Assembly: GCA_036785375.1 (NCBI GenBank)
Contig: JAWMAR010000253.1
Span: forward strand, 2,356,001-2,420,000
Reading direction: 5' to 3'
From: Leucoraja ocellata
Taxonomy: Eukaryota
DNA: 64,000 bases
This document shows, in pieces, positions 38,311 to 47,764 of this stretch (positions are counted from its first letter, which is position 1; the number at the start of each line of letters is the position of its first letter). The position numbers were made by a program, and so were the translations under genes. Under the pieces are notes generated by a model, which was not told the DNA's origin, did not search any database, and was given only the letters and a program-made list of their open reading frames with translations.

Positions 38311-39971
38311 GCCCCTTAGACTTCACACATTAGACTTTAGATACAGTGCGGAAGCAGGCTCTTCGGCCCACCGAGTCCCCACCTACCAGCGATGACCCCG
38401 TACACTATCACTATCCTACACACCAGGGACAAAGTTACAGAAGCGAATTACCGACAAATCCAGCACGTCTTTGTGCTGTGGGAGGAAAACCGGAAAACCC
38501 GGAGAAAACCCGCGCGGTCACAGAGAGAAGGTACAAACTCCACACAGGCCGAATCCGCAGTCTCCACATTGGAACCAGATTCTCTGGCGCTGTAAGGCAG
38601 CAACTCTACCGCTGCACCTCATCTATCCATGTACTCCAGCGATGCTGCCTGACCAGTTGAGTTCCTCCTGCACGTTGTGTTCTCATTATCATCTTCTCGT
38701 TTCGGGAAACTCCCGCGCCCCAGAGATTGGGGGCGCGTAGAGCGACTAATTGATTCCATCACCCCACGGGCCAGCAGCGGCCCTGTGGGCCAAATGGCCG
38801 CCTGCACGGCTGCAGTCAATTTGGGGAGGAAACAACAGATGTCTCACATTCAGGCCGATGCCGTGTGACACTGGGCTTGGCGGTGTATGGGGGAGGTGCG
38901 GGCGCCGGCAGGTCGCCCACTCTCACAGGCATTTCACCTCTGACCAAGTCACCAACTTGCATTAAGCTAAGCCCGTGGGCTGTCTGTGGGTAGATGACCT
39001 ATCTTTGACTCTCTAGTTGTGAGTCTCGCTGGCAAGTGTGCAGGTCTCATGCAGGTGTGCAGGTCTCATGCTCTCGCCGCGTTTTCGTGAGACAAAGCGT
39101 AGCCTTCACCCATCGTCCTCGCTACTAAATCGTGTCCATCGCTCTACATTCAACCAGACCCGATCGAAGTATGCAACATTATGATAGGCATAGAGGGGGT
39201 GGACAGTCAGAACCATTTTTCCAGGGTGGAAATGTCAAAGATTCGAGGGCCCAGCTTTTCATTCAGAGGAGCAAAGTTCAAAGGAGATTGTCAAAGAGTC
39301 ATAGTCACCCAGTGGGGAAACAGGCCCTTCGGCCCAACTTGCCCACAACTTGCCAACACCGGCCAATATGTCCTACCTGCCTGCGCTTGGCCCATATCCC
39401 TTTAAACCTATCCCATCACGTACCTGTCCAAATGTTTCTTAAACGTTGCGGTAGTCCCAACCTCAACTGCCTCCTCCGGCAGCTTGTTCCAAACATCCAC
39501 CATCCTTTGTGTGAAAAAGTTACTCCCCAGATTCCTATTGAACCCTTTCCCCGTGTCATTTTCGCACGGCTGTATGACAGCTTTTCCCAAAGATCTACCG
39601 CCCTTAATGTGATAAAGTTACCCCTCAGATTTCTATTAAACCTTTCCCCCTTCTCCTTAGACCTGTGTCCTCTGGTCCTCGATTCACCTACTCTGGGCAA
39701 GAGACTGTGCATCGACCCGATCTATTACTCTCATGATTTTACACACCTCTATAAGATCACCCCTCATCCTCCTGTGCTCCAAGGAATATAGACCCAGCCT
39801 GTAGCTCACACCCTCTAGTCCTGGCAACATGCGTGTAAATCTTCTCTGTACCTTTTCTAGATTGATAATATATTTTGTATAACATGGTGGCCAGAACTGA
39901 ACGCGATACTCTAAATGCGGCCTCACCAACGTCTTATGCAAATCCCCACCACGGGTGCTGTCTGTACCGAG

Positions 39972-40487
39972 TATAGCGGCAGATTTTTCAGATCTTTCAG
40001 GAAATTAACTCCCTAGCCACTAATTGGACGAGAGGGGATAAGGGAATATCTTCGGTACGCATGCAAGCTGCCTCAGAGACTTTCAGAGCTTCTACTTTCA
40101 TAAAGCTTCAGCACACAGTCTTTTAATGAATATTTTCTTTATTGTAGATATAAAACTGTAAGATACATCCAAGGTTTTCCGACTTGTTCCAGCAATCTTC
40201 TTCGAACTCCAGCGCATTGCTTCAGATACTAGAAAACTCCTCGTGTCTTCTTCTTCACATGAGGCTTGACATGCTTGACCTGTGGCTCGACATGGTCGAA
40301 GGATAAACCTTCTCCCTCTCCTGTCCAAAACGAATTCTCAACTAAAACTAACACGCAAGCAGTTAAGCTGCATAAACACGCCCCAAGACACGTCATAAAA
40401 TCCCACCCACATTATAACGGGCTGGCTAAAATTTAAAGGAACATGCCATCCACAATGACATGCAAAATAGGCCAAATGGCCACTACA
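39972..40487 (-). repeat. 3' LTR
   Basis: Matches 46175-46690 with two visible substitutions. Confidence 0.97.
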
Positions 40488-40502
40488 TACCGGCCCCTAA
40501 TT
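40488..40502 (-). promoter_or_regulatory. Polypurine-tract position (AATTAGGGGCCGGTA)
   Basis: G-rich tract abutting the 3' LTR. Confidence 0.6.
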
Positions 40503-40602
40503 GTTCCGAATACATAATGAGGCAATTACCAAATAACATCAAAAAAGTGGCCATTAAGGCTTAACATACATCAAAATCAAAATATCAGGGAATAAAACCC
40601 TG

Positions 40603-40678
40603 TGGCTCCCTCGTCAGGAAATCAAACCGCGATCGCCCGCATGCTAGGCGTGGATACTAACCACTATACTAATGAGGA
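40603..40678 (-). tRNA. tRNA-Asp-derived, degenerate tRNA-like sequence with encoded CCA (anticodon position reads AGC)
   Basis: TCCTCATTAGTATAGTGGTTAGTATCCACGCCTAGCATGCGGGCGATCGCGGTTTGATTTCCTGACGAGGGAGCCA aligns end to end with vertebrate tRNA-Asp(GTC), with about 12 differences. Confidence 0.85.
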
Positions 40679-40801
40679 AAAAATAGCATGCACTATATAT
40701 CTGCAATCACAATTCTTTCTCGACTCTTCCATCTTCGCTTTCGCCTTCTAGAAGCAAGCACAACTTAGTTATTGATCTTATTAAAACATTGTTTTTTGTT
40801 T

Positions 40802-43606
40802 TCAGTCGCACAATACGTACCAAACCCTGAACATCAGGCATGATTTCCAGTATTCTACCCCCCTTTCTGCAGGATTCTTCTCCAAGATACTTTCTGTTAT
40901 TTGTTTCTTTTCCCGTATTTTCATCAACAATCTTGTTTTTATTTTAAGAAACCAGGCTACCGATGTTCTCAATTTATTCCATGATGAAAAGTGGGTAATT
41001 AAACTATTCACGGCGTCATATGAGTTTTTTTCAATCACATTCACCGAAATGTTTTGTTTAATTTCCGGATCTGTTATAGAGATTTCAAATCCGAGTTCAA
41101 GCTTTGGCCATTCTCTACTTGGCTTACTAAGAAACTTTGGCCCATTGATCCATCTCTTGTTATTAAGAAAGCAATTTGCTGTTTGTCCCCTAGAGGCTTC
41201 ATCCGCAGGATTTTCCTTTGTATTAACATATCTCCATTGAGAAACATTAGTAGCTCCTAGTACAAAGGAAACTCTATTTGCAACAAATGTCATAAAACGT
41301 TTGCTTTCATTGTTAATGTATTTCAAAACCGTAGTACTATCGGTCCAGAAGGTCGATTCTTCCAGTTGAAATTGCAGTTCCTTTTTCAGCATTATGTCAA
41401 TTTTCACAGCTAAGACTGCTGCTGTAAGTTCCATTCTGGGAATCGTCATTTGCTTCAATGGTGCCACTCTGGCTTTTCCCATTACGAATGCAACATGCAC
41501 TCTTTTGTTTACATCTTGTAGTCTTAAGTATGAAACAGTCCCATAACCACTTTCGCTGGCATCCGAAAAGTGATGCAGTTGCGCATTTCCGATATTACCA
41601 ATGGTTTTAGGCTTTATACACCGATCTACCTTAAACGTTGACATTTTTTGGAGGTCTTTTAACCATTCTGTCCAACTGTGCGAGGATGTTTGAGTTATAC
41701 TCTCATCCCAACCAAGTTTTTCTCGACACAGATTCTGTAAAATTAACTTGGCTAGCAGTGTAAATGGTGCCAAAATTGGTTCATATACTGAACCAATCAC
41801 AGATAAGATACCTCTTCTTGTGCATGGTCGTTCCTGAATTGACAATTTAAACTTAAACACATCCGTTTCCACACACCAGTGCAGTCCCAGTGCCCTTTCC
41901 ATTGGCAAGTTGTCTTTGTCTAAATCCATCACCTTGGTTTCTTCGGCTCTGTCATCTGGTGGAATGCTTTCCAAAACAGCACGACTGTTGCTAACCCACT
42001 TGGTAAGTACAAATCCTCCCTTATTGCAGAGAGAGGTTAGGTGCTTCACTATTTGAATTGCCTCTAACTCGGTAGATACGGATTTTAGGCAATCGTCCAC
42101 ATAAAAATTATTTTTCAAAGTGGAAATTACCTCCTCTGGGAAATAATCTTTATTATCCTCTGCGGTTTTCCTCAAAGCGAAATTCGCACAACTTGGAGAT
42201 GACACTGCTCCGAAAAGATGTACTTTCATTCGGTAATCAACAAGGTCTTGCTGCACATCCCCTTCAGGCCACCATAAGAATCGCAGATAATCAATATGTT
42301 TACCAGTTACTTTCACTTGATAAAACATTGCTCTGATATCAGCTATCAAAGCTATCGGTTCTTGCCTAAATTTGATGAGAACTCCAAGGAGCGAGTTAGT
42401 AAGGTCTGGACCTTGCAGTAATTCACTGTTAAGTGATGTCCCTTTAAAGACTGCCGCGCAGTCAAAGACCACCCTCAATGTCCCTTTCTTCGAGTGGTAC
42501 ACCCCATGGTGCGGAATATACCAGATCTCTCCATCATCTCGATATAGTTGATTCATTGGTATCCTTTCAGCATAATCGTTATTAATCATATTCTGTAAGA
42601 AGGATGTATATTCCTCTTGGAATTTCGTGTTCTTAACAAATTTACGTTTCAAACCATGAATACGCTGTTCAGCCATATAGCGATTATTTGGTAAATTAAC
42701 ACCTTCTTTCTTGAAAGGTAAATCCAAACAATAATGTCCATTTTTCATCTTAACTGAATGGTTCATAATATCTAAGAATTTCAATTCTTCTCTAGACATT
42801 TCTTCATGTTCTTGGCTGGTACTTTCATTGAAGTCATGATTATATTGCTTCATTAACAGCTTTTCCAATTTACCTGTAGATATTTGGTTAACAGCAACAG
42901 CACGGCTATTCATTTTGCTGGTGCTTTCCTTATTCCTACACAAGGAGCCATAAATAACCCATCCTAGTAGGGTCTTCATAGCATACGGTCCATCCCCTTG
43001 GCTCCTAATTATCTGTACAGGTTCTAATGCTCTCAGGGCATTCGTTCCAATAAGTAAGTCAATATCAGAATTTATCTTTGTTATTTTGACTTCTTTCAGG
43101 TAAGGCCATTGCTGTAAGTCTTCACATCTGGGTACATTTTGACGACCAACAGGCATTGTTTCATGTGTGAAAACCTCTGAAATTGGAATAAAATTATCTT
43201 CATCCAAACTGGATATCTCCATATTTGTTATATAATAACTCTGGTAATCCTTTTCTTTATTCATGGTACGCATTTGAATTTTAACTTTCTCTCCAGTAAT
43301 GTCCAACCTTCTCATCAAATTCTCTGTGCAAAAAGTAGCTGAACTCCCATGATCCAGAAATGCATATGTTTGCAACACTACATTAGTTTCCCTATTTCTC
43401 ACTTGTACTGGTAAAATAGAGAAAATGCATGCTTTCTCTCCGGCCCCAATATGTGCAGTTACTTGAGGCGAGGTGATAGCATTAACATCCGCTGACTCCT
43501 TTTTCTGCTCAGTATGATCTGGCTCTTTCTTTACAGTATGAAGCACATCAGGATGATTCTGCTTACATTTGTCACAAACTAGTGGACACTTACAGTCTTT
43601 TACCAT
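40802..43606 (-). CDS. BEL/Pao pol region: Cys knuckles, aspartic protease, RT, RNase H; truncated before integrase
   Basis: AFLDHGS, YIPHHGV, RVVFDC, GPDLTNSL, ADIRAMF, YVDD, HHFSDAS, TIPRMEL, NPADEASRG. Confidence 0.95.
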   Translation of the reverse strand: MVKDCKCPLVCDKCKQNHPDVLHTVKKEPDHTEQKKESADVNAITSPQVTAHIGAGEKACIFSILPVQVRNRETNVVLQTYAFLDHGSSATFCTENLMRRLDITGEKVKIQMRTMNKEKDYQSYYITNMEISSLDEDNFIPISEVFTHETMPVGRQNVPRCEDLQQWPYLKEVKITKINSDIDLLIGTNALRALEPVQIIRSQGDGPYAMKTLLGWVIYGSLCRNKESTSKMNSRAVAVNQISTGKLEKLLMKQYNHDFNESTSQEHEEMSREELKFLDIMNHSVKMKNGHYCLDLPFKKEGVNLPNNRYMAEQRIHGLKRKFVKNTKFQEEYTSFLQNMINNDYAERIPMNQLYRDDGEIWYIPHHGVYHSKKGTLRVVFDCAAVFKGTSLNSELLQGPDLTNSLLGVLIKFRQEPIALIADIRAMFYQVKVTGKHIDYLRFLWWPEGDVQQDLVDYRMKVHLFGAVSSPSCANFALRKTAEDNKDYFPEEVISTLKNNFYVDDCLKSVSTELEAIQIVKHLTSLCNKGGFVLTKWVSNSRAVLESIPPDDRAEETKVMDLDKDNLPMERALGLHWCVETDVFKFKLSIQERPCTRRGILSVIGSVYEPILAPFTLLAKLILQNLCREKLGWDESITQTSSHSWTEWLKDLQKMSTFKVDRCIKPKTIGNIGNAQLHHFSDASESGYGTVSYLRLQDVNKRVHVAFVMGKARVAPLKQMTIPRMELTAAVLAVKIDIMLKKELQFQLEESTFWTDSTTVLKYINNESKRFMTFVANRVSFVLGATNVSQWRYVNTKENPADEASRGQTANCFLNNKRWINGPKFLSKPSREWPKLELGFEISITDPEIKQNISVNVIEKNSYDAVNSLITHFSSWNKLRTSVAWFLKIKTRLLMKIREKKQITESILEKNPAERGVEYWKSCLMFRVWYVLCD

Positions 43607-43647
43607 GTGCCCCTTCTTTAAACATCCATAGCAGATTCCATTCCTTT

Positions 43648-45543
43648 TTAAAAGTCCATCTTTTTTTCATATTTCTTTTCCTTAAATTTACGACACCATC
43701 TTATGGTGTGACCTACTTCATCACAAAATGGACAGAATTCATTCTTTCTGGTCGGTGCATCCTCTTTGGCACCACCCAACACCTTCTCAGGTATTATATT
43801 GGTAGCAAAATTGCTTTTCTTAGGCCCTGTCTTTTGTTTAGTTTTGACATAGGTAGAACCCTTATAAATTGCAAGTGGCTTGGCATCTTCAATAATCCCG
43901 CTGCATGAATCTGACATGTACCGTACTTCTCTTTCTAAATATTCCACCAGGTCTGGTAGCCTGGCTACTTGATTGCTCTTATCACGTAATTTACCAGCCC
44001 TATCTCTCCACTTTTCTCTCATTCTTCTGGGCAACTTGCTAATGATGATTCTCATATTACTTGAAAGATTAATTTCCTCCATATAGCCAAGATTTTTCAT
44101 CGAGCTGCAACATCTTCTCAGAAATATTGCATATTCACTCAATTTATCCACATCTTCTGGCTTGATTTCTCTCCAATCATGGGCCTTTTCAATGTATGCA
44201 TTCGCAATCCTCTGTTCATCACCAAAACGTTCCTTCAATAATCTTCTCGCCTTTTTATAACCCTGGTTGTCTGGCTCCATCTGACAACTTTCCACAAGCC
44301 CCTTCACCTTCCCTTGTGTGTACTTCACCAGAAACCGTAAGCGCTCTTCTTCATCCTCAACTTTCTTCTCTAATACCTCTTCCAGTGCCCTCACGAAAGT
44401 TTCATATTCTAAAGGATCTCCAGCATATGTAGGAATTTCAACTGGTGGCAAAATGAGAGATTTATTTCGTCGAGCTATAATCTCGTTGAATTCAGATTGC
44501 TTATGCAGCAGTGCCAATAGACCAACCTGGCTCCCTTCTCCTTGGTCCACTGGTCCTTCTCGAGTTTGTACGGATGTTCTTATAGTAGCTAGTTTCCGTC
44601 TAGCACCCATTTGCTGAGCTGAAGGTTCACTCAACCTATTTAGGTTTTCCAATCCAAGGTATCCTGTGGACTTTGACCGTGGAATCGATTCAACTGCCAA
44701 TTCACTCTGAGCAGGTCTGGCTCTCTGTCTAGAGCTTATCGCCTTTGATGATCCAGAGCTGCATCTATACCCTTCACTTTCCAGTATGTCCCTTCTGGCT
44801 TTAGCCACCTTCAACTTTGTATCTAATTCCAGTTGTTCCTGACATCGCGCCATTTCTTCTTGCTGACGGGCCATCTGTTGCGTCATCTCCTCTTGCTGTC
44901 GGGCCATCTGTTGCATCATCTCTTGTTGCTGTCGGGCCATCTCATGTTTTTTCTTCATAGCATCCGCTTCTATTGAGAGCGCTGCTAACTCAGCCTTTGC
45001 TCCCAAACGAGCAGAAGCCCTCGAAACCGAACTGGCTGAGCTACCAGATTTACGGCCTGATCTTTGTGAAGATACATTTGAGATACTATCTCCCGGTTCT
45101 ATTTCATCACCTTCTTCTTCTGGCTTAGTATCTTCTTTTCTGCTACCTTTACTTTTGCTAACTTGCTCTAACCATCCTTCTACAACTTCTTTGGATTCAT
45201 CATAATACTCCGTATTTTCACAATCCCACTTAAAATGTCTTTCACGCTCCTCTTGAGAACGCTCTGCCTCCAGCAGTATGTCCTGCTTCTCTTTCAGCTC
45301 ATGGTTAAGGCTACTTATCAGGCGTAATTTCTCTTCCACCTTGTCCTGGTTCTCTTCTGATTCCATGAGTGTCTTCACACTTTCAAACAGCCTTCTAATC
45401 TTCTTCCCCAACTTGTTCCTATCCAATTCAGCCTCCTTGAGAACATGACTTCGACCTTTCTCAGTGAGTTTAAGTTGTCTGGCTGGTCTTTCTTCACCAC
45501 CTAGTGGCTCTTCTGGCATAGCTCTGCCCTCATCTTCCTTCAT
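43648..45543 (-). CDS. BEL/Pao gag, separated from pol by a 1-nt frameshift
   Basis: 631-aa ORF with coiled coil, IEPGDSISNV, YAGDPLEY, LKERFG and a CPFC..GH..C knuckle. Confidence 0.92.
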   Translation of the reverse strand: MKEDEGRAMPEEPLGGEERPARQLKLTEKGRSHVLKEAELDRNKLGKKIRRLFESVKTLMESEENQDKVEEKLRLISSLNHELKEKQDILLEAERSQEERERHFKWDCENTEYYDESKEVVEGWLEQVSKSKGSRKEDTKPEEEGDEIEPGDSISNVSSQRSGRKSGSSASSVSRASARLGAKAELAALSIEADAMKKKHEMARQQQEMMQQMARQQEEMTQQMARQQEEMARCQEQLELDTKLKVAKARRDILESEGYRCSSGSSKAISSRQRARPAQSELAVESIPRSKSTGYLGLENLNRLSEPSAQQMGARRKLATIRTSVQTREGPVDQGEGSQVGLLALLHKQSEFNEIIARRNKSLILPPVEIPTYAGDPLEYETFVRALEEVLEKKVEDEEERLRFLVKYTQGKVKGLVESCQMEPDNQGYKKARRLLKERFGDEQRIANAYIEKAHDWREIKPEDVDKLSEYAIFLRRCCSSMKNLGYMEEINLSSNMRIIISKLPRRMREKWRDRAGKLRDKSNQVARLPDLVEYLEREVRYMSDSCSGIIEDAKPLAIYKGSTYVKTKQKTGPKKSNFATNIIPEKVLGGAKEDAPTRKNEFCPFCDEVGHTIRWCRKFKEKKYEKKMDF

Positions 45544-46159
45544 GATTTAAAAGAGGTCTTGGCAGATTGCCAAGTCTTTAAATTAGTCGAAAAAAGTCTC
45601 TGCTTCTGAGTGACTTTGTTATTATCAACAATTTCTTCCAAAACTAAAACATACTGATAATGTAGAGAACCTCTCTCTAATTCCAGGTGCAAAATAAATG
45701 ATGCTAATTCCAATGGAATGCTCCTTTATCTCTTTGATTCAAAACAATCCAAGGTCGGTCTGCCTTTCCCAGACACGCTGGAGAAAACAGCTTTTTGAGC
45801 TCTATTACAGAATTCTTTCAATTAAAACCGTAATTTTGATTCAAAAGGTAATAATCAATTCGTACTCACAATTCAGTGATACGTCTTCCGATGCGTTCCG
45901 ATGCTGTTGATAGACCTCAAGGCTCTTCCTGGCCGAGATCTTCTTCAGTTCCACGATTGGAACCAATCTTCTTTGGCTGCACCTCTCCTAGGTCTTAGCC
46001 TTCGTCCTGCTCTGGCCGCACCTTTCCTAGGTCTTAGCCTTCGCACTTCGATCTTCTGTCCCTATCTCAGGGACTGGTATTTACCCCCGCCGGAGGTTCG
46101 CTTTTACTTATCTTCTTCTGTCCCAATCTCTGGGACTGGCAATTACCCCCTGCCGGAGG

Positions 46160-46170
46160 TATCCTTCGAC
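46160..46170 (-). promoter_or_regulatory. Non-tRNA primer-binding site, complementary to LTR 46498-46508
   Basis: GTCGAAGGATA lies 4 nt downstream of the 5' LTR. There is no TGG, and the exact reverse complement is inside the LTR. Confidence 0.65.
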
Positions 46171-46174
46171 TTAA

Positions 46175-46690
46175 TATAGCGGCAGATTTTTCAGATCTTT
46201 CAGGAAATTAACTCCCTAGCCACTAATTGGACGAGAGGGGATAAGGGAATATCTTCGGTACGCATGCAAGCTGCCTCAGAGACTTTCAGAGCTTCTACTT
46301 TCATAAAGCTTCAGCACACAGTCTTTTAATGAATATTTTCTTTATTGTAGATATAAAACAGTAAGATACATCCAAGGATTTCCGACTTGTTCCAGCAATC
46401 TTCTTCGAACTCCAGCGCATTGCTTCAGATACTAGAAAACTCCTCGTGTCTTCTTCTTCACATGAGGCTTGACATGCTTGACCTGTGGCTCGACATGGTC
46501 GAAGGATAAACCTTCTCCCTCTCCTGTCCAAAACGAATTCTCAACTAAAACTAACACGCAAGCAGTTAAGCTGCATAAACACGCCCCAAGACACGTCATA
46601 AAATCCCACCCACATTATAACGGGCTGGCTAAAATTTAAAGGAACATGCCATCCACAATGACATGCAAAATAGGCCAAATGGCCACTACA
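46175..46690 (-). repeat. 5' LTR
   Basis: TGTAGTGGC...GCCGCTATA, with AATAAA at 46341-46346 (minus). Confidence 0.97.
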
Positions 46691-47764
46691 CCGAGTTTGT
46701 ACGTTCTCCCCGTGGCCGCGTGGATTTCCTCCCATACTCAGAAGACGTACAGGTTTGTAGGTTAACTGGCTTGGTATAAATGCAAATTGCCCCGCGTGTG
46801 CGGGGATCGCTGGTCGGTGCAGACTCGGTGGGCCTCTTGCCGCGCTGCACCTCCAAAGGTACGATTGCAAAGTTTAAGGAACATTTTAAGGAACATTTAG
46901 ACATGTACATGGATAGGATTGGTTTAGAGGGACATGAAATGTTGGAGTAACTCAGTGAGTAACATGCAGCATCTCTGGATAGAAGGGATGGGTGATGTTT
47001 CGGGTCGAGACCCTTCTTCAGACTGAGTATAGGGGGCAAACGCAAGAAGATGTGTCTAGTCTAGATGGGGCATGTTGATCTGTGTGGGCAAGTTGGGCCG
47101 AAGGGCCTGTTTCCATGCTGTATGACTCGTGTCCCAAATAACATTCTGAATTATCGGGATTTTAACTGTTTAAATCTGTTACCATCCTGCCCCGCAAAAC
47201 CCCCTCCCTGCTTAAATTTCACTCTAATTGCCAGTATTTCATCTAAAACGAATGGGGCGTCTAATTGCTATTTAATTACCACATAATTTTATCTGATTAC
47301 ATGCAGACTTGCTTCACGAATCGCAGTCTGAATTTCATTTCATTGGAAATTTAGTTTAGAGATATAACGCGAACACATGCCGTTCAGCCCACTGAGTCCA
47401 CGCCGACCAGCGACCCCTCGTACACTAGCATCATCCAACACACTAGGGGTAAGTTACAATTATACCAATCCAATTATCCAACAAACCTGTAGGTCTTTGG
47501 AGTGTGGGAGGAAACTGAAACGCCCGGAGAAAACCCACGCAGCTCACGGGGAGAACTTACAAACTCCATACAAACAGCACCCGTAGTCAGGATCGAACCC
47601 GCGTGTCTGGTGCTGTGAGTAGCAAATCTACCCGCTGAGCAACCGTGCTGCCCTGATATATGAATGTCCAGCATGGTTAATTTTAAATAGTTCGCTTGTG
47701 TTTCAGTTTGGTATTGGGAGTGGGGTATTGACATGGATAGAGGGCTGGTAGGTAGACGGGAAAC

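What the first reader, a model, noticed from the sequence alone, without database searches (positions are those of the whole stretch)
46155..46515. BEL/Pao retrotransposon with a self-complementary PBS: candidate tRNA-independent self-priming
Seen: the 5' LTR is followed (minus strand) by TTAA-GTCGAAGGATACCT, with no TGG tRNA-type PBS. The LTR itself contains AGGTT-TATCCTTCGAC (46498-46508; 40295-40305 in the 3' LTR). That gives 11 perfect pairs plus 3 more after a 2-nt bulge, with the 3' end pointing into U5 as a primer must. The site lies about 185 nt into the LTR, downstream of TTAGTT initiator-like motifs and upstream of AATAAA, so it is plausibly near the transcript 5' end. It also overlaps a competing hairpin, TCGAC-CAT-GTCGA. 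Chance of an 11-mer match is roughly 516/4^11 per tested position. Established: self-priming through an 11-nt 5'-end/PBS duplex cleaved by RNase H is known for Tf1/sushi-type Gypsy elements, while BEL/Pao elements are normally described as tRNA-primed. Inference: this lineage self-primes, possibly by independent origin. I do not know of a description of this, but cannot search.
Basis: partly seen in the sequence, partly recalled or inferred. Interest (0 to 1): 0.88.

Follow-up and report, generated by a model that had tools for sequence, protein, structure and literature searches.

The report
Self-priming site in BEL/Pao retrotransposons
A young BEL/Pao retrotransposon and many of its relatives carry, where a tRNA primer site should be, a short block that pairs perfectly with a piece of the element's own repeat, so they probably start copying themselves without a host tRNA.

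Summary
The window holds a young BEL/Pao element on the minus strand. Its LTRs are 516 nt and differ at 2 positions, and the target-site duplication is CTCGG. Four bases after the 5' LTR lies GTCGAAGGATA (46170-46160). It is perfectly complementary to TATCCTTCGAC at LTR positions 183-193 (46508-46498).

I fetched 80 related loci from metagenome contigs. The same layout recurs with different sequences: LTR end ..ACA, then 2-5 nt, then a 9-14-nt block starting GT that pairs with an upstream LTR site ending AC.
- 17 of the 81 sequences (window included) show an exact match of at least 10 nt.
- Five more show it in a weaker form.
- On a 13-row alignment, 9 of 11 pairs change on both sides and 95.8% of cells pair. 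None of 500 shuffles reached this.
- The trait sits in two clades of the pol tree and is missing from a third.
- None of the 13 two-LTR sequences has TGG after the LTR.

Best reading (0.75): Tf1-like self-priming in a BEL/Pao lineage. My searches of the held library found no description of this.

Not shown: the transcript start, the RNase H cut, and a comparison with host tRNAs. Two unchecked earlier notes of this scan flag self-priming candidates elsewhere in this genome.

The parts
46175..46690 (-). 5' LTR (516 nt; TGTAG...CTATA; most other copies read CTACA at the end)
   Evidence: 46176 variant
39972..40487 (-). 3' LTR (516 nt, 2 differences from the 5' LTR)
46691..46695 (-). target-site duplication CTCGG, upstream copy (downstream copy at 39967-39971)
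   Evidence: read from the sequence
46498..46508 (-). LTR-internal block TATCCTTCGAC (LTR 183-193), the proposed self-primer; its 3' end is ..AC followed by C. The same block lies in the 3' LTR at 40295-40305
46160..46170 (-). primer-binding block GTCGAAGGATA, perfectly complementary to 46498-46508
46171..46174 (-). 4-nt spacer TTAA between the LTR end and the primer-binding block (2-5 nt in relatives)
46157..46159 (-). CCT directly after the block; it can pair with AGG at 46511-46513 (weak second helix, 3-5 bp in relatives)
   Evidence: read
46341..46346 (-). AATAAA polyadenylation signal, 152 nt after the self-primer block; it places the block inside R
46615..46620 (-). TTATAA, the only TATA-like motif seen upstream in this LTR, about 112 nt before the block; function not shown
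   Evidence: read from the sequence
43648..45543 (-). gag ORF (631 aa, DUF1759)
40802..43606 (-). pol ORF (934 aa; Peptidase_A17 and weak RVT_1; no integrase domain)
40488..40498 (-). polypurine-type tract AGGGGCCGG+TA directly before the 3' LTR; the same motif is in 42 of 80 related loci

Best explanation
The element belongs to a lineage of BEL/Pao (Belpaoviridae) LTR retrotransposons that most likely start minus-strand DNA synthesis by self-priming rather than with a host tRNA.

**Shown**
- A 9-14-nt block lies 2-5 nt after the 5' LTR. It is perfectly complementary to a block inside the same LTR, upstream of the poly(A) signal and so within R.
- This pairing is kept in many relatives although the sequences differ.

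**Inferred, by analogy with Tf1 of fission yeast**
1. The 5' part of the genomic RNA folds back, and the R block anneals to the post-LTR block.
2. The element's RNase H cuts after the conserved AC. The next base is C in most members.
3. The new 3' end is extended through the spacer and U5, then through R up to the cut. This gives strong-stop DNA that transfers to the 3' R.
4. Copying of the primer during plus-strand synthesis would rewrite the primer-binding block in each cycle. That would explain why the match stays perfect.

**Also inferred**
- The primer block seems to lie some 15-30 nt (relatives) to about 80 nt (window copy) inside the transcript, not at its first base.
- The window copy lacks integrase, so it would need a partner element to insert.
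For: **Identity**
- Peptidase_A17 scores 8e-44 and DUF1759 2e-07. There are 2129 pol homologues at E<=1e-20 among the 8000 candidates scored, the best 58-68% identical.

**Window duplex**

**Two-LTR test (LTR end known without regard to pairing)**
- 5 of 13 sequences have an exact complement of 10-11 nt that starts 3-4 nt after the LTR: the window, L012, L066 (3' LTR copy), L046 and L044.
- Shuffle p values are 0.000-0.023.

**All 81 sequences**
- 478 exact inverted pairs of at least 10 nt were found, and 41 have a downstream arm starting GT.
- Of these, 17 loci show the full signature outside long ORFs: window, L001, L003, L005, L008, L011-L015, L017, L020, L040, L044, L046, L048, L065.
- Weaker forms add L066, L073 with 1 mismatch, and L007 with 9 bp. 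L009 and L018 are 100% and 99.6% identical to L007 over this stretch.
- Exact 11-mers with this context: 18 in 182,086 nt outside long ORFs against 0 in 454,701 nt inside them.

**Covariation**
- On alignment A4 (13 rows), 95.8% of 142 cells pair and 9 of 11 pairs change on both sides, in 31 cells. None of 500 shuffles reaches this, and slid controls pair at 32-55%.
- Each element's own block forms 9-10 of 10 pairs with its own site. Crossed between elements, the mean is 5.9.

**Second helix**
- Matched mean is 3.6 bp against 2.6 bp crossed; permutation p is 0.001.

**Poly(A) signal**
- A[AT]TAAA lies 45-199 nt after the site in 15 of 21 loci listed.

**No tRNA-type site**
- 0 of 13 two-LTR sequences has TGG in the first 12 nt after the LTR.

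**Clade structure**
- The label needs 2 changes on the pol tree, and 0 of 500 shuffles is as low.

**Literature**
- Self-priming is described as use of a 5' segment of the element's mRNA as primer (PMC4600332, passages).
- It has been predicted for Tf1/sushi, Tcn1 and the copia TAR lineage (PMC6317226, passages).
Against: **No RNA evidence**
- All 24 listed runs are Logan contigs, and none is on record as RNA.
- The two RNA-guess runs show a whole LTR with foreign flanks and no depth over most of the leader.
- So the transcript start, and whether the block is in the RNA at all, are unknown.

**Structure and promoter**
- The window LTR has no TATA-like motif near the block.
- The thermodynamic fold does not form the duplex: the block sits in two local hairpins, and the fold z-score is only -1.5.

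**An uncompensated variant**
- In organism B, the only LTR contig has C->G at 46498, the would-be 3' end of the primer.
- The contig over the primer-binding block is unchanged, so there is no compensation.

**Limits of the comparative evidence**
- In L066 the 5' LTR copy has 2 mismatches.
- Rows of A4 were picked because they pair, and one row (L013) is a column out of register, so the percentage paired is biased.
- Many blocks share a T-rich pattern (..GTTTTTGAC), so the lineages are not fully independent.
- 8 of 13 two-LTR sequences lack an exact match of 10 nt or more.
- The 9 two-LTR loci tested with G-U pairs allowed (L078 among them) show nothing beyond chance.

**Not available**
- No host tRNA set could be compared.
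- Hosts of the metagenome contigs are unknown.
Confidence: 0.75

Rival explanations
1. The R block and the post-LTR block form a conserved long-range RNA helix with another role, such as genome circularisation, packaging, dimerisation or control of translation. The real primer would be an unidentified cellular RNA that binds there or nearby.
For: The duplex and its covariation show pairing, not priming. A second helix flanks it, as in structured retroviral leaders (my own knowledge). No RNA or cDNA data exist.
Against: The helix sits exactly where a primer-binding site sits, 2-5 nt after the LTR. Its polarity puts a 3' end next to U5. Its length of 9-14 nt matches the known self-primers. No TGG-type site is present in any of the 13 two-LTR sequences. 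Perfect matches in diverged lineages fit a block that is recopied from the primer in each cycle.
Confidence: 0.15
2. The post-LTR block binds a host tRNA, a tRNA half or another small RNA, as copia does with an internal part of initiator tRNA. The LTR match would then be incidental or a mimic.
For: The ICTV profile states that Belpaoviridae use an 18-nt site complementary to the 3' end region of tRNA-Arg or tRNA-Gly (PMC8742986, passages). No host tRNA set could be tested here.
Against: The blocks differ between elements at 9 of 11 positions, and each matches its own LTR. No block starts with TGG. The element's own tRNA-like cassette offers only 6 nt of complement. Rfam finds nothing in 39900-46800 at E<=1.
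Confidence: 0.04
3. Chance complementarity in the window copy, picked out after the fact.
For: A 10-nt complement to the LTR occurs elsewhere in the leader, and 5 of 2000 approximate shuffles reach 11 nt. The scan looked at very many windows.
Against: The pattern recurs at the same place in 17 sequences exactly and 5 more weakly, with 0 such pairs in coding sequence. Covariation is seen.
Confidence: 0.01

Closest known systems
Tf1/Tf2 and Tj1 of fission yeasts, and the Tf1/sushi group of Ty3/gypsy elements (self-priming)
   Same: There is no tRNA-type site. A short block next to the 5' LTR is complementary to a 5' segment of the element's own RNA within the LTR, with a proposed cleavage that frees the primer (PMC4600332 passages; PMC6317226 passages). 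The 11-nt length is the same as I recall for Tf1.
   Different: The superfamily differs: Pao peptidase A17 and DUF1759 gag. The block appears to lie inside R rather than at the first base of the RNA, an inference. It has a conserved GT start and AC end, a 2-5-nt spacer, and a short second helix. Nothing has been tested at the bench.
Plant Tcn1 (Ty3/gypsy) and TAR/Houba/Osr-1 (Ty1/copia) lineages with predicted self-priming
   Same: Self-priming is inferred from sequence alone and is specific to lineages within a superfamily (PMC6317226 passages).
   Different: These are plant elements of the two other superfamilies. Their details are in supplementary files that I could not open.
Canonical BEL/Pao (Belpaoviridae) elements as described by ICTV
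   Same: LTRs, gag with DUF1759, pol with Pao peptidase and RT, and a purine-rich tract before the 3' LTR.
   Different: ICTV describes an 18-nt site complementary to tRNA-Arg or tRNA-Gly and replication primed by a host tRNA (PMC8742986). Here no such site is present. The window copy also lacks integrase.
copia-type priming by an internal part (half) of initiator tRNA
   Same: The primer-binding site does not start with TGG.
   Different: A half-tRNA site is the same in all elements that use that tRNA. Here the block differs from element to element and follows each element's own LTR.

Membership tests
BEL/Pao (Belpaoviridae) LTR retrotransposons | Pol with the Pao-type peptidase A17 region and reverse transcriptase | tested here: met
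   PF05380 at 8.3e-44 (149.8 bits, cut-off 22.3). RVT_1 scores only 22.8 bits, below its cut-off of 29.6. Homologues carry the same domains.
BEL/Pao (Belpaoviridae) LTR retrotransposons | Gag of the DUF1759 type | tested here: met
   PF03564 at 1.9e-07, 31.6 bits, cut-off 25.4.
BEL/Pao (Belpaoviridae) LTR retrotransposons | Two LTRs with a target-site duplication | tested here: met
   516-nt LTRs with 2 differences, and a CTCGG duplication.
BEL/Pao (Belpaoviridae) LTR retrotransposons | Integrase at the end of pol | tested here: not met
   No integrase family was found in either ORF. Relatives list PF00665/PF17921 and have ORFs of about 2000 aa. The window copy is therefore a deleted, non-autonomous member.
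BEL/Pao (Belpaoviridae) LTR retrotransposons | 18-nt primer-binding site complementary to tRNA-Arg or tRNA-Gly (ICTV profile) | tested here: not met
   There is no TGG in the first 12 nt after the LTR in 13 of 13 two-LTR sequences. Host tRNAs themselves were not available.
Self-priming LTR retrotransposons (Tf1 type), as a mechanism | Primer-binding block complementary to a 5' part of the element's own RNA within the LTR | tested here: met
   11 of 11 pairs in the window. The same holds in 17 sequences exactly and 5 more weakly.
Self-priming LTR retrotransposons (Tf1 type), as a mechanism | Pairing kept by compensatory change in relatives | tested here: met
   9 of 11 pairs change on both sides, 0 of 500 shuffles reach this, and slid controls are far lower.
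Self-priming LTR retrotransposons (Tf1 type), as a mechanism | The primer block is the very 5' end of the transcript | tested here: inconclusive
   No RNA reads were available. TATA-like motifs 44-62 nt upstream in several relatives, and a helix upstream of the block, suggest an internal position.
Self-priming LTR retrotransposons (Tf1 type), as a mechanism | RNase H cut that frees the primer, and cDNA joined to it | not testable with these tools
   This needs cDNA or RNA-end data. Only the conserved AC followed by C hints at a cut site.
Tf1/sushi clade of Ty3/gypsy | Ty3/gypsy-type pol and gag | tested here: not met
   Pfam gives Pao peptidase and DUF1759, and all listed homologues are of the Pao type.

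The most novel reading that the evidence does not exclude
A large and old part of the BEL/Pao superfamily does not use tRNA at all. It comprises at least two clades: one holding the window's element, the other found in unidentified metagenome hosts. In these clades, reverse transcription would be primed by an internal piece of R, cut free by the element's RNase H after a conserved AC. This would be a third, independent appearance of self-priming among LTR retrotransposons. A further clade has neither a TGG site nor self-complementarity, which hints at yet another priming mode.
Probability: 0.6. Interest if true: 0.85.

Novelty: new variant of a known kind. Interest (0 to 1): 0.78.

Why it matters
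**What was known**
- Self-priming of reverse transcription has been demonstrated for Tf1 (PMC4600332 passages).
- From sequence, it has been inferred only in Ty3/gypsy and Ty1/copia lineages (PMC6317226 passages).
- The ICTV profile states that Belpaoviridae are tRNA-primed (PMC8742986).

**What this changes**
- If this lineage self-primes, all three LTR-retrotransposon superfamilies have found this solution. The textbook description of BEL/Pao would need a correction.

**Practical consequences**
- Annotation tools that look for tRNA-complementary sites will miss or misjudge these elements.
- The rule found here is simple: ..ACA, then 2-5 nt, then a GT-starting block that matches an LTR site ending AC. 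It marks the LTR end, the R region, and probably the RNase H cut site.
- The rule can be tested directly with 5'-end and cDNA-end sequencing.

Tried and rejected
**Steps that led nowhere**
I used metagenome contigs instead.
- A scan of viral contigs found no relative.
- Sequencing runs: all 24 listed runs are contigs and none is on record as RNA. No transcript start or end could be read.
- ARAGORN found no tRNA in the window or in 34 loci. Rfam found nothing in 39900-46800. The tRNA alternative could therefore only be tested indirectly.
- A fuzzy search for the window's own block in the relatives found no homologue upstream of gag. This first looked like a failure, but it is what covariation predicts.

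**Guesses and methods I dropped**
- My first guess at LTR ends from terminal inverted repeats was wrong for L007 (corrected).
- The one-mismatch search is too noisy to use: 69 rows outside long ORFs against 58 inside them. Only L073 was taken from it.
- MAFFT put 7 of 17 rows out of register in A3, so I did not use A3. A4 has 12 of 13 rows in register, with L013 one column off on the 5' arm. The four clade-B rows are absent from A4 for that reason.

**Loci that could not be judged**
- Loci of or near the window's clade: L002, L004, L006, L010, L016, L021, L025, L029, L069 and L019. Each contig lacks the LTR middle or the 5' end.

**Ideas considered and rejected**
- A primer from the element's own tRNA-like cassette: only 6 nt of complement.
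- A PBS further downstream starting TGG: none lies near the LTR.

**Literature**
- Searches found no paper that describes self-priming in BEL/Pao.
- The two main BEL/Pao surveys, a mollusc survey and the GyDB network paper do not contain the words PBS, tRNA or priming (find mode).
- I could not read Lin and Levin 1997 (not held), Butler et al. 2001 or Frame et al. 2001. I know them from reference lists or recall, so a prior mention there cannot be excluded.
The PBS tables of PMC6317226 and PMC13524379 may bear on this.
Full report
**What is in the window**

On the minus strand lies a complete-looking LTR element.
- The 5' LTR is 46690..46175 and the 3' LTR is 40487..39972. Both are 516 nt and differ at 2 positions.
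- The element is flanked by a 5-bp duplication, CTCGG.
- Its two ORFs carry DUF1759 (gag) and Pao peptidase A17 with a weak RVT_1 match (pol). No integrase family was found.
- Pol has 2129 homologues at E<=1e-20 among the 8000 candidates scored. The best are 58-68% identical, and those with a name come mostly from bony fishes.
- So it is a young, integrase-less BEL/Pao element. An earlier unchecked note of the scan (s1-900018) describes an integrase-less BEL/Pao array elsewhere in this genome.

**The observation**

- The 5' LTR is followed by TTAA and then GTCGAAGGATA (46170..46160).
- The LTR holds the exact reverse complement, TATCCTTCGAC, at positions 183-193 (46508..46498, and 40305..40295 in the 3' LTR).
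- The polarity is that of a primer. AATAAA follows 152 nt later. Two small local hairpins overlap the block.
- By itself the match is only moderately unlikely. It appeared in 5 of 2000 approximate shuffles and 0 of 300 dinucleotide shuffles.
- A 10-nt complement exists elsewhere in the leader.
- The minimum-free-energy fold does not choose the long-range duplex.
- The window alone could therefore not settle the matter.

**Relatives**

With an alignment of pol homologues, the metagenome scan returned 80 loci at 41-56% identity.

*First test: two-LTR loci.* I took only loci with two LTRs, where the LTR end is known without reference to any pairing.
- In 5 of 13 sequences (the window included), an exact 10-11-nt complement to the LTR starts 3-4 nt after the LTR end. 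Shuffle p values are 0.000 to 0.023.
- The sequences differ:

| Sequence | Post-LTR block | LTR site |
|---|---|---|
| Window | GTCGAAGGATA | TATCCTTCGAC |
| L012 | GTCAACAAAAA | TTTTTGTTGAC |
| L066 | GTTTCGAAAAA | TTTTTCGAAAC |
| L046 | GTAACGAAAA | TTTTCGTTAC |
| L044 | GTTTCGAAAA | TTTTCGAAAC |

- In L066 the match is to the 3' LTR copy. The 5' copy has two mismatches.
- None of the 13 has TGG in the first 12 nt after the LTR.

*Second test: all loci.* I listed every exact inverted pair of at least 10 nt, 60-900 nt apart, in all 81 sequences.
- There are 478 pairs, and 41 have a downstream arm starting GT.
- 17 loci show the same signature outside long ORFs: LTR end ..ACA, then 2-5 nt, then a GT-starting block of 10-14 nt, paired with an upstream site ending AC that is nearly always followed by C.
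- These are the window, L001, L003, L005, L008, L011, L012, L013, L014, L015, L017, L020, L040, L044, L046, L048 and L065.
- L003/L020 and L015/L017 are near-copies of each other.
- Four more are possible but atypical: L022, L072, L077 and L080.
- Weaker forms are L073 with one mismatch and L007 with 9 bp. L009 and L018 are 100% and 99.6% identical to L007 there.
- Exact 11-mers with this context number 18 in 182,086 nt outside long ORFs and 0 in 454,701 nt inside them.

**Covariation**

- On a MAFFT alignment of 13 rows that runs from 12 nt before the site to 8 nt after the block (A4), I named the 11-pair helix and counted.
- 95.8% of 142 cells pair. 9 of 11 pairs have changes on both sides, in 31 cells. 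None of 500 shuffles reaches any of the five measures.
- Sliding the partner by 1-3 columns drops pairing to 32-55% and the covariation score from 0.63 to 0.05-0.18.
- The two pairs at the primer's 3' end (C-G, A-U) hardly vary.
- My own count on 17 sequences, anchored by coordinates, gives 9-10 of 10 pairs for each element with itself. Blocks and sites crossed between elements give a mean of 5.9.
- Two cautions apply. The rows were chosen because they pair, so the percentage paired is biased upward. Many blocks also share a T-rich pattern.
- The unbiased evidence is the two-LTR test and the contrast between coding and non-coding sequence.

**Context of the block**

- A poly(A) signal lies 45-199 nt after the site in 15 of 21 loci listed. 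This fits a position in R.
- In several relatives of the window's clade, a TATA-like motif lies 44-62 nt before the site (L001, L005, L008, L012, L013, L065, L007; read).
- This would put the RNA start some 15-30 nt before the block. In the window, the only such motif is about 112 nt before it.
- The 3-5 bases that follow the primer-binding block can pair with bases 3-5 nt upstream of the site. The matched mean is 3.6 bp against 2.6 bp when crossed between loci, with permutation p of 0.001.
- Both points suggest that the primer block is internal to the transcript. That differs from what papers say of Tf1 and Tj1, where the site matches the 5' end of the mRNA (PMC4600332 passages).

**Distribution**

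- A quick pol tree of 78 rows (L065, L069 and L073 left out for short matches) puts the signature in two clades.
- One clade of 23 rows (support 90) holds the window and 15 labelled rows. One clade of 9 rows (support 99) holds 5 labelled rows.
- The label needs 2 changes, and 0 of 500 shuffles is as low.
- The unlabelled rows in the window's clade are contigs that lack the LTR middle or the 5' end. Some still show the ..ACA + spacer + GT context.
- By my count from those calls, every locus of that clade that could be judged has the signature.
- A third clade of 34 rows has none.
- The nine two-LTR loci without an exact match were tested with G-U pairs allowed: L031, L051, L054, L070, L076 and L078 in that third clade, and L023, L034 and L080 elsewhere on the tree. 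They show no complement beyond chance. They also have no TGG.
- How these elements prime is open.

**Other copies of the window family**

- 20 of the 24 listed runs, from organisms coded A, B and C, hold the stretch or part of it. All are contigs.
- Laid on 45544-46800, the primer-binding block shows no variant at 10% or more in any of four runs.
- The LTR end reads CTACA in nearly all copies, where the window has CTATA.
- A diverged subfamily has another U5 end yet keeps the block.
- Against the model, the single LTR contig of organism B has C->G at 46498, the would-be primer 3' end. The contig over the primer-binding block shows no compensating change. The same variant is rare in organism C (3 contigs).
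- The two RNA-guess runs gave no information on transcript ends.

**Reading**

- The conserved, covarying duplex at the primer-binding position, with no tRNA-type site, is best explained by self-priming of the Tf1 kind.
- The R block would be cut after AC by the element's RNase H and extended into U5.
- The steps after pairing are inferred, not shown.
- A structural role for the helix with another, unknown primer remains possible (0.15).
- A tRNA or tRNA-fragment primer is hard to square with blocks that differ between elements and follow their own LTRs (0.04).
- Chance is excluded by the relatives.

**What is known**

- Papers in the held library describe self-priming for Tf1, Tf2, Tj1 and the Tf1/sushi group. 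They predict it for plant Tcn1 and for the copia TAR lineage (passages only).
- The ICTV profile says Belpaoviridae use tRNA-Arg or tRNA-Gly (passages).
- Eight searches found no description of self-priming in BEL/Pao.
- The main BEL/Pao surveys do not mention priming at all (find mode).
- I could not read older subscription papers or any supplementary file, so prior mention is not excluded.
- Two unchecked notes of this scan (s1-885379, s1-885686) flag self-priming candidates elsewhere in this genome, one of them in a Gypsy element.

**Verdict**

- It is a new variant of a known kind of mechanism, in a superfamily where it was not expected.
- RNA-end and cDNA-end evidence are still missing.

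Noticed in passing
window 40603-40688 (minus strand): A tRNA-like sequence of about 86 nt ending in CCA lies between the pol stop and the purine tract. To my eye it resembles tRNA-Asp (recalled). ARAGORN and Rfam do not call it. It offers only 6 nt of complement to the primer-binding block.
   Followed up: partly
window 40802-43606 and 40488-40801: Pol ends without an integrase domain, while relatives have gag-pol ORFs of about 2000 aa with integrase. The copy is non-autonomous. The tRNA-like cassette sits where the integrase part would be.
   Followed up: partly
window 45985-46155 (minus strand): The leader just after the primer-binding block holds two pairs of tandem repeats, with units of about 60 nt and about 40 nt. 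Each unit has an internal inverted repeat (read).
   Followed up: no
window 40490-40498; loci L001-L077: The purine-type tract AGGGGCCGG, followed by 2-5 nt and the TGT of the LTR, is found in 42 of 80 related loci as well as in the window. LTR starts are also alike (TGTAGGAGCC / TGTTGGAGCC / TGTAGTGGCC).
   Followed up: partly
loci L023, L031, L034, L051, L054, L070, L076, L078, L080: These two-LTR BEL/Pao loci have neither TGG after the LTR nor any complement to their own LTR beyond chance. Their post-LTR sequence still starts TT..GT in most. L031, L051, L054, L070, L076 and L078 are in the third clade of the pol tree. Their primer is unknown.
   Followed up: partly
window 46725-46800: The flank of the 5' LTR is an extremely abundant repeat. 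Summed contig depth is about 100 times that of the LTR in all four runs laid.
   Followed up: no
window 46176: The window copy's LTRs end CTATA. Nearly all other copies in three organisms read CTACA, the usual TG..CA-type end.
   Followed up: no
loci L007, L009, L018, L001, L005, L008, L011, L014: Several contigs are tandem or circularly collapsed assemblies, with the LTR shared between pol and the next gag or with identical contig ends of 55-99 nt. This recalls the shared-LTR array in note s1-900018.
   Followed up: no
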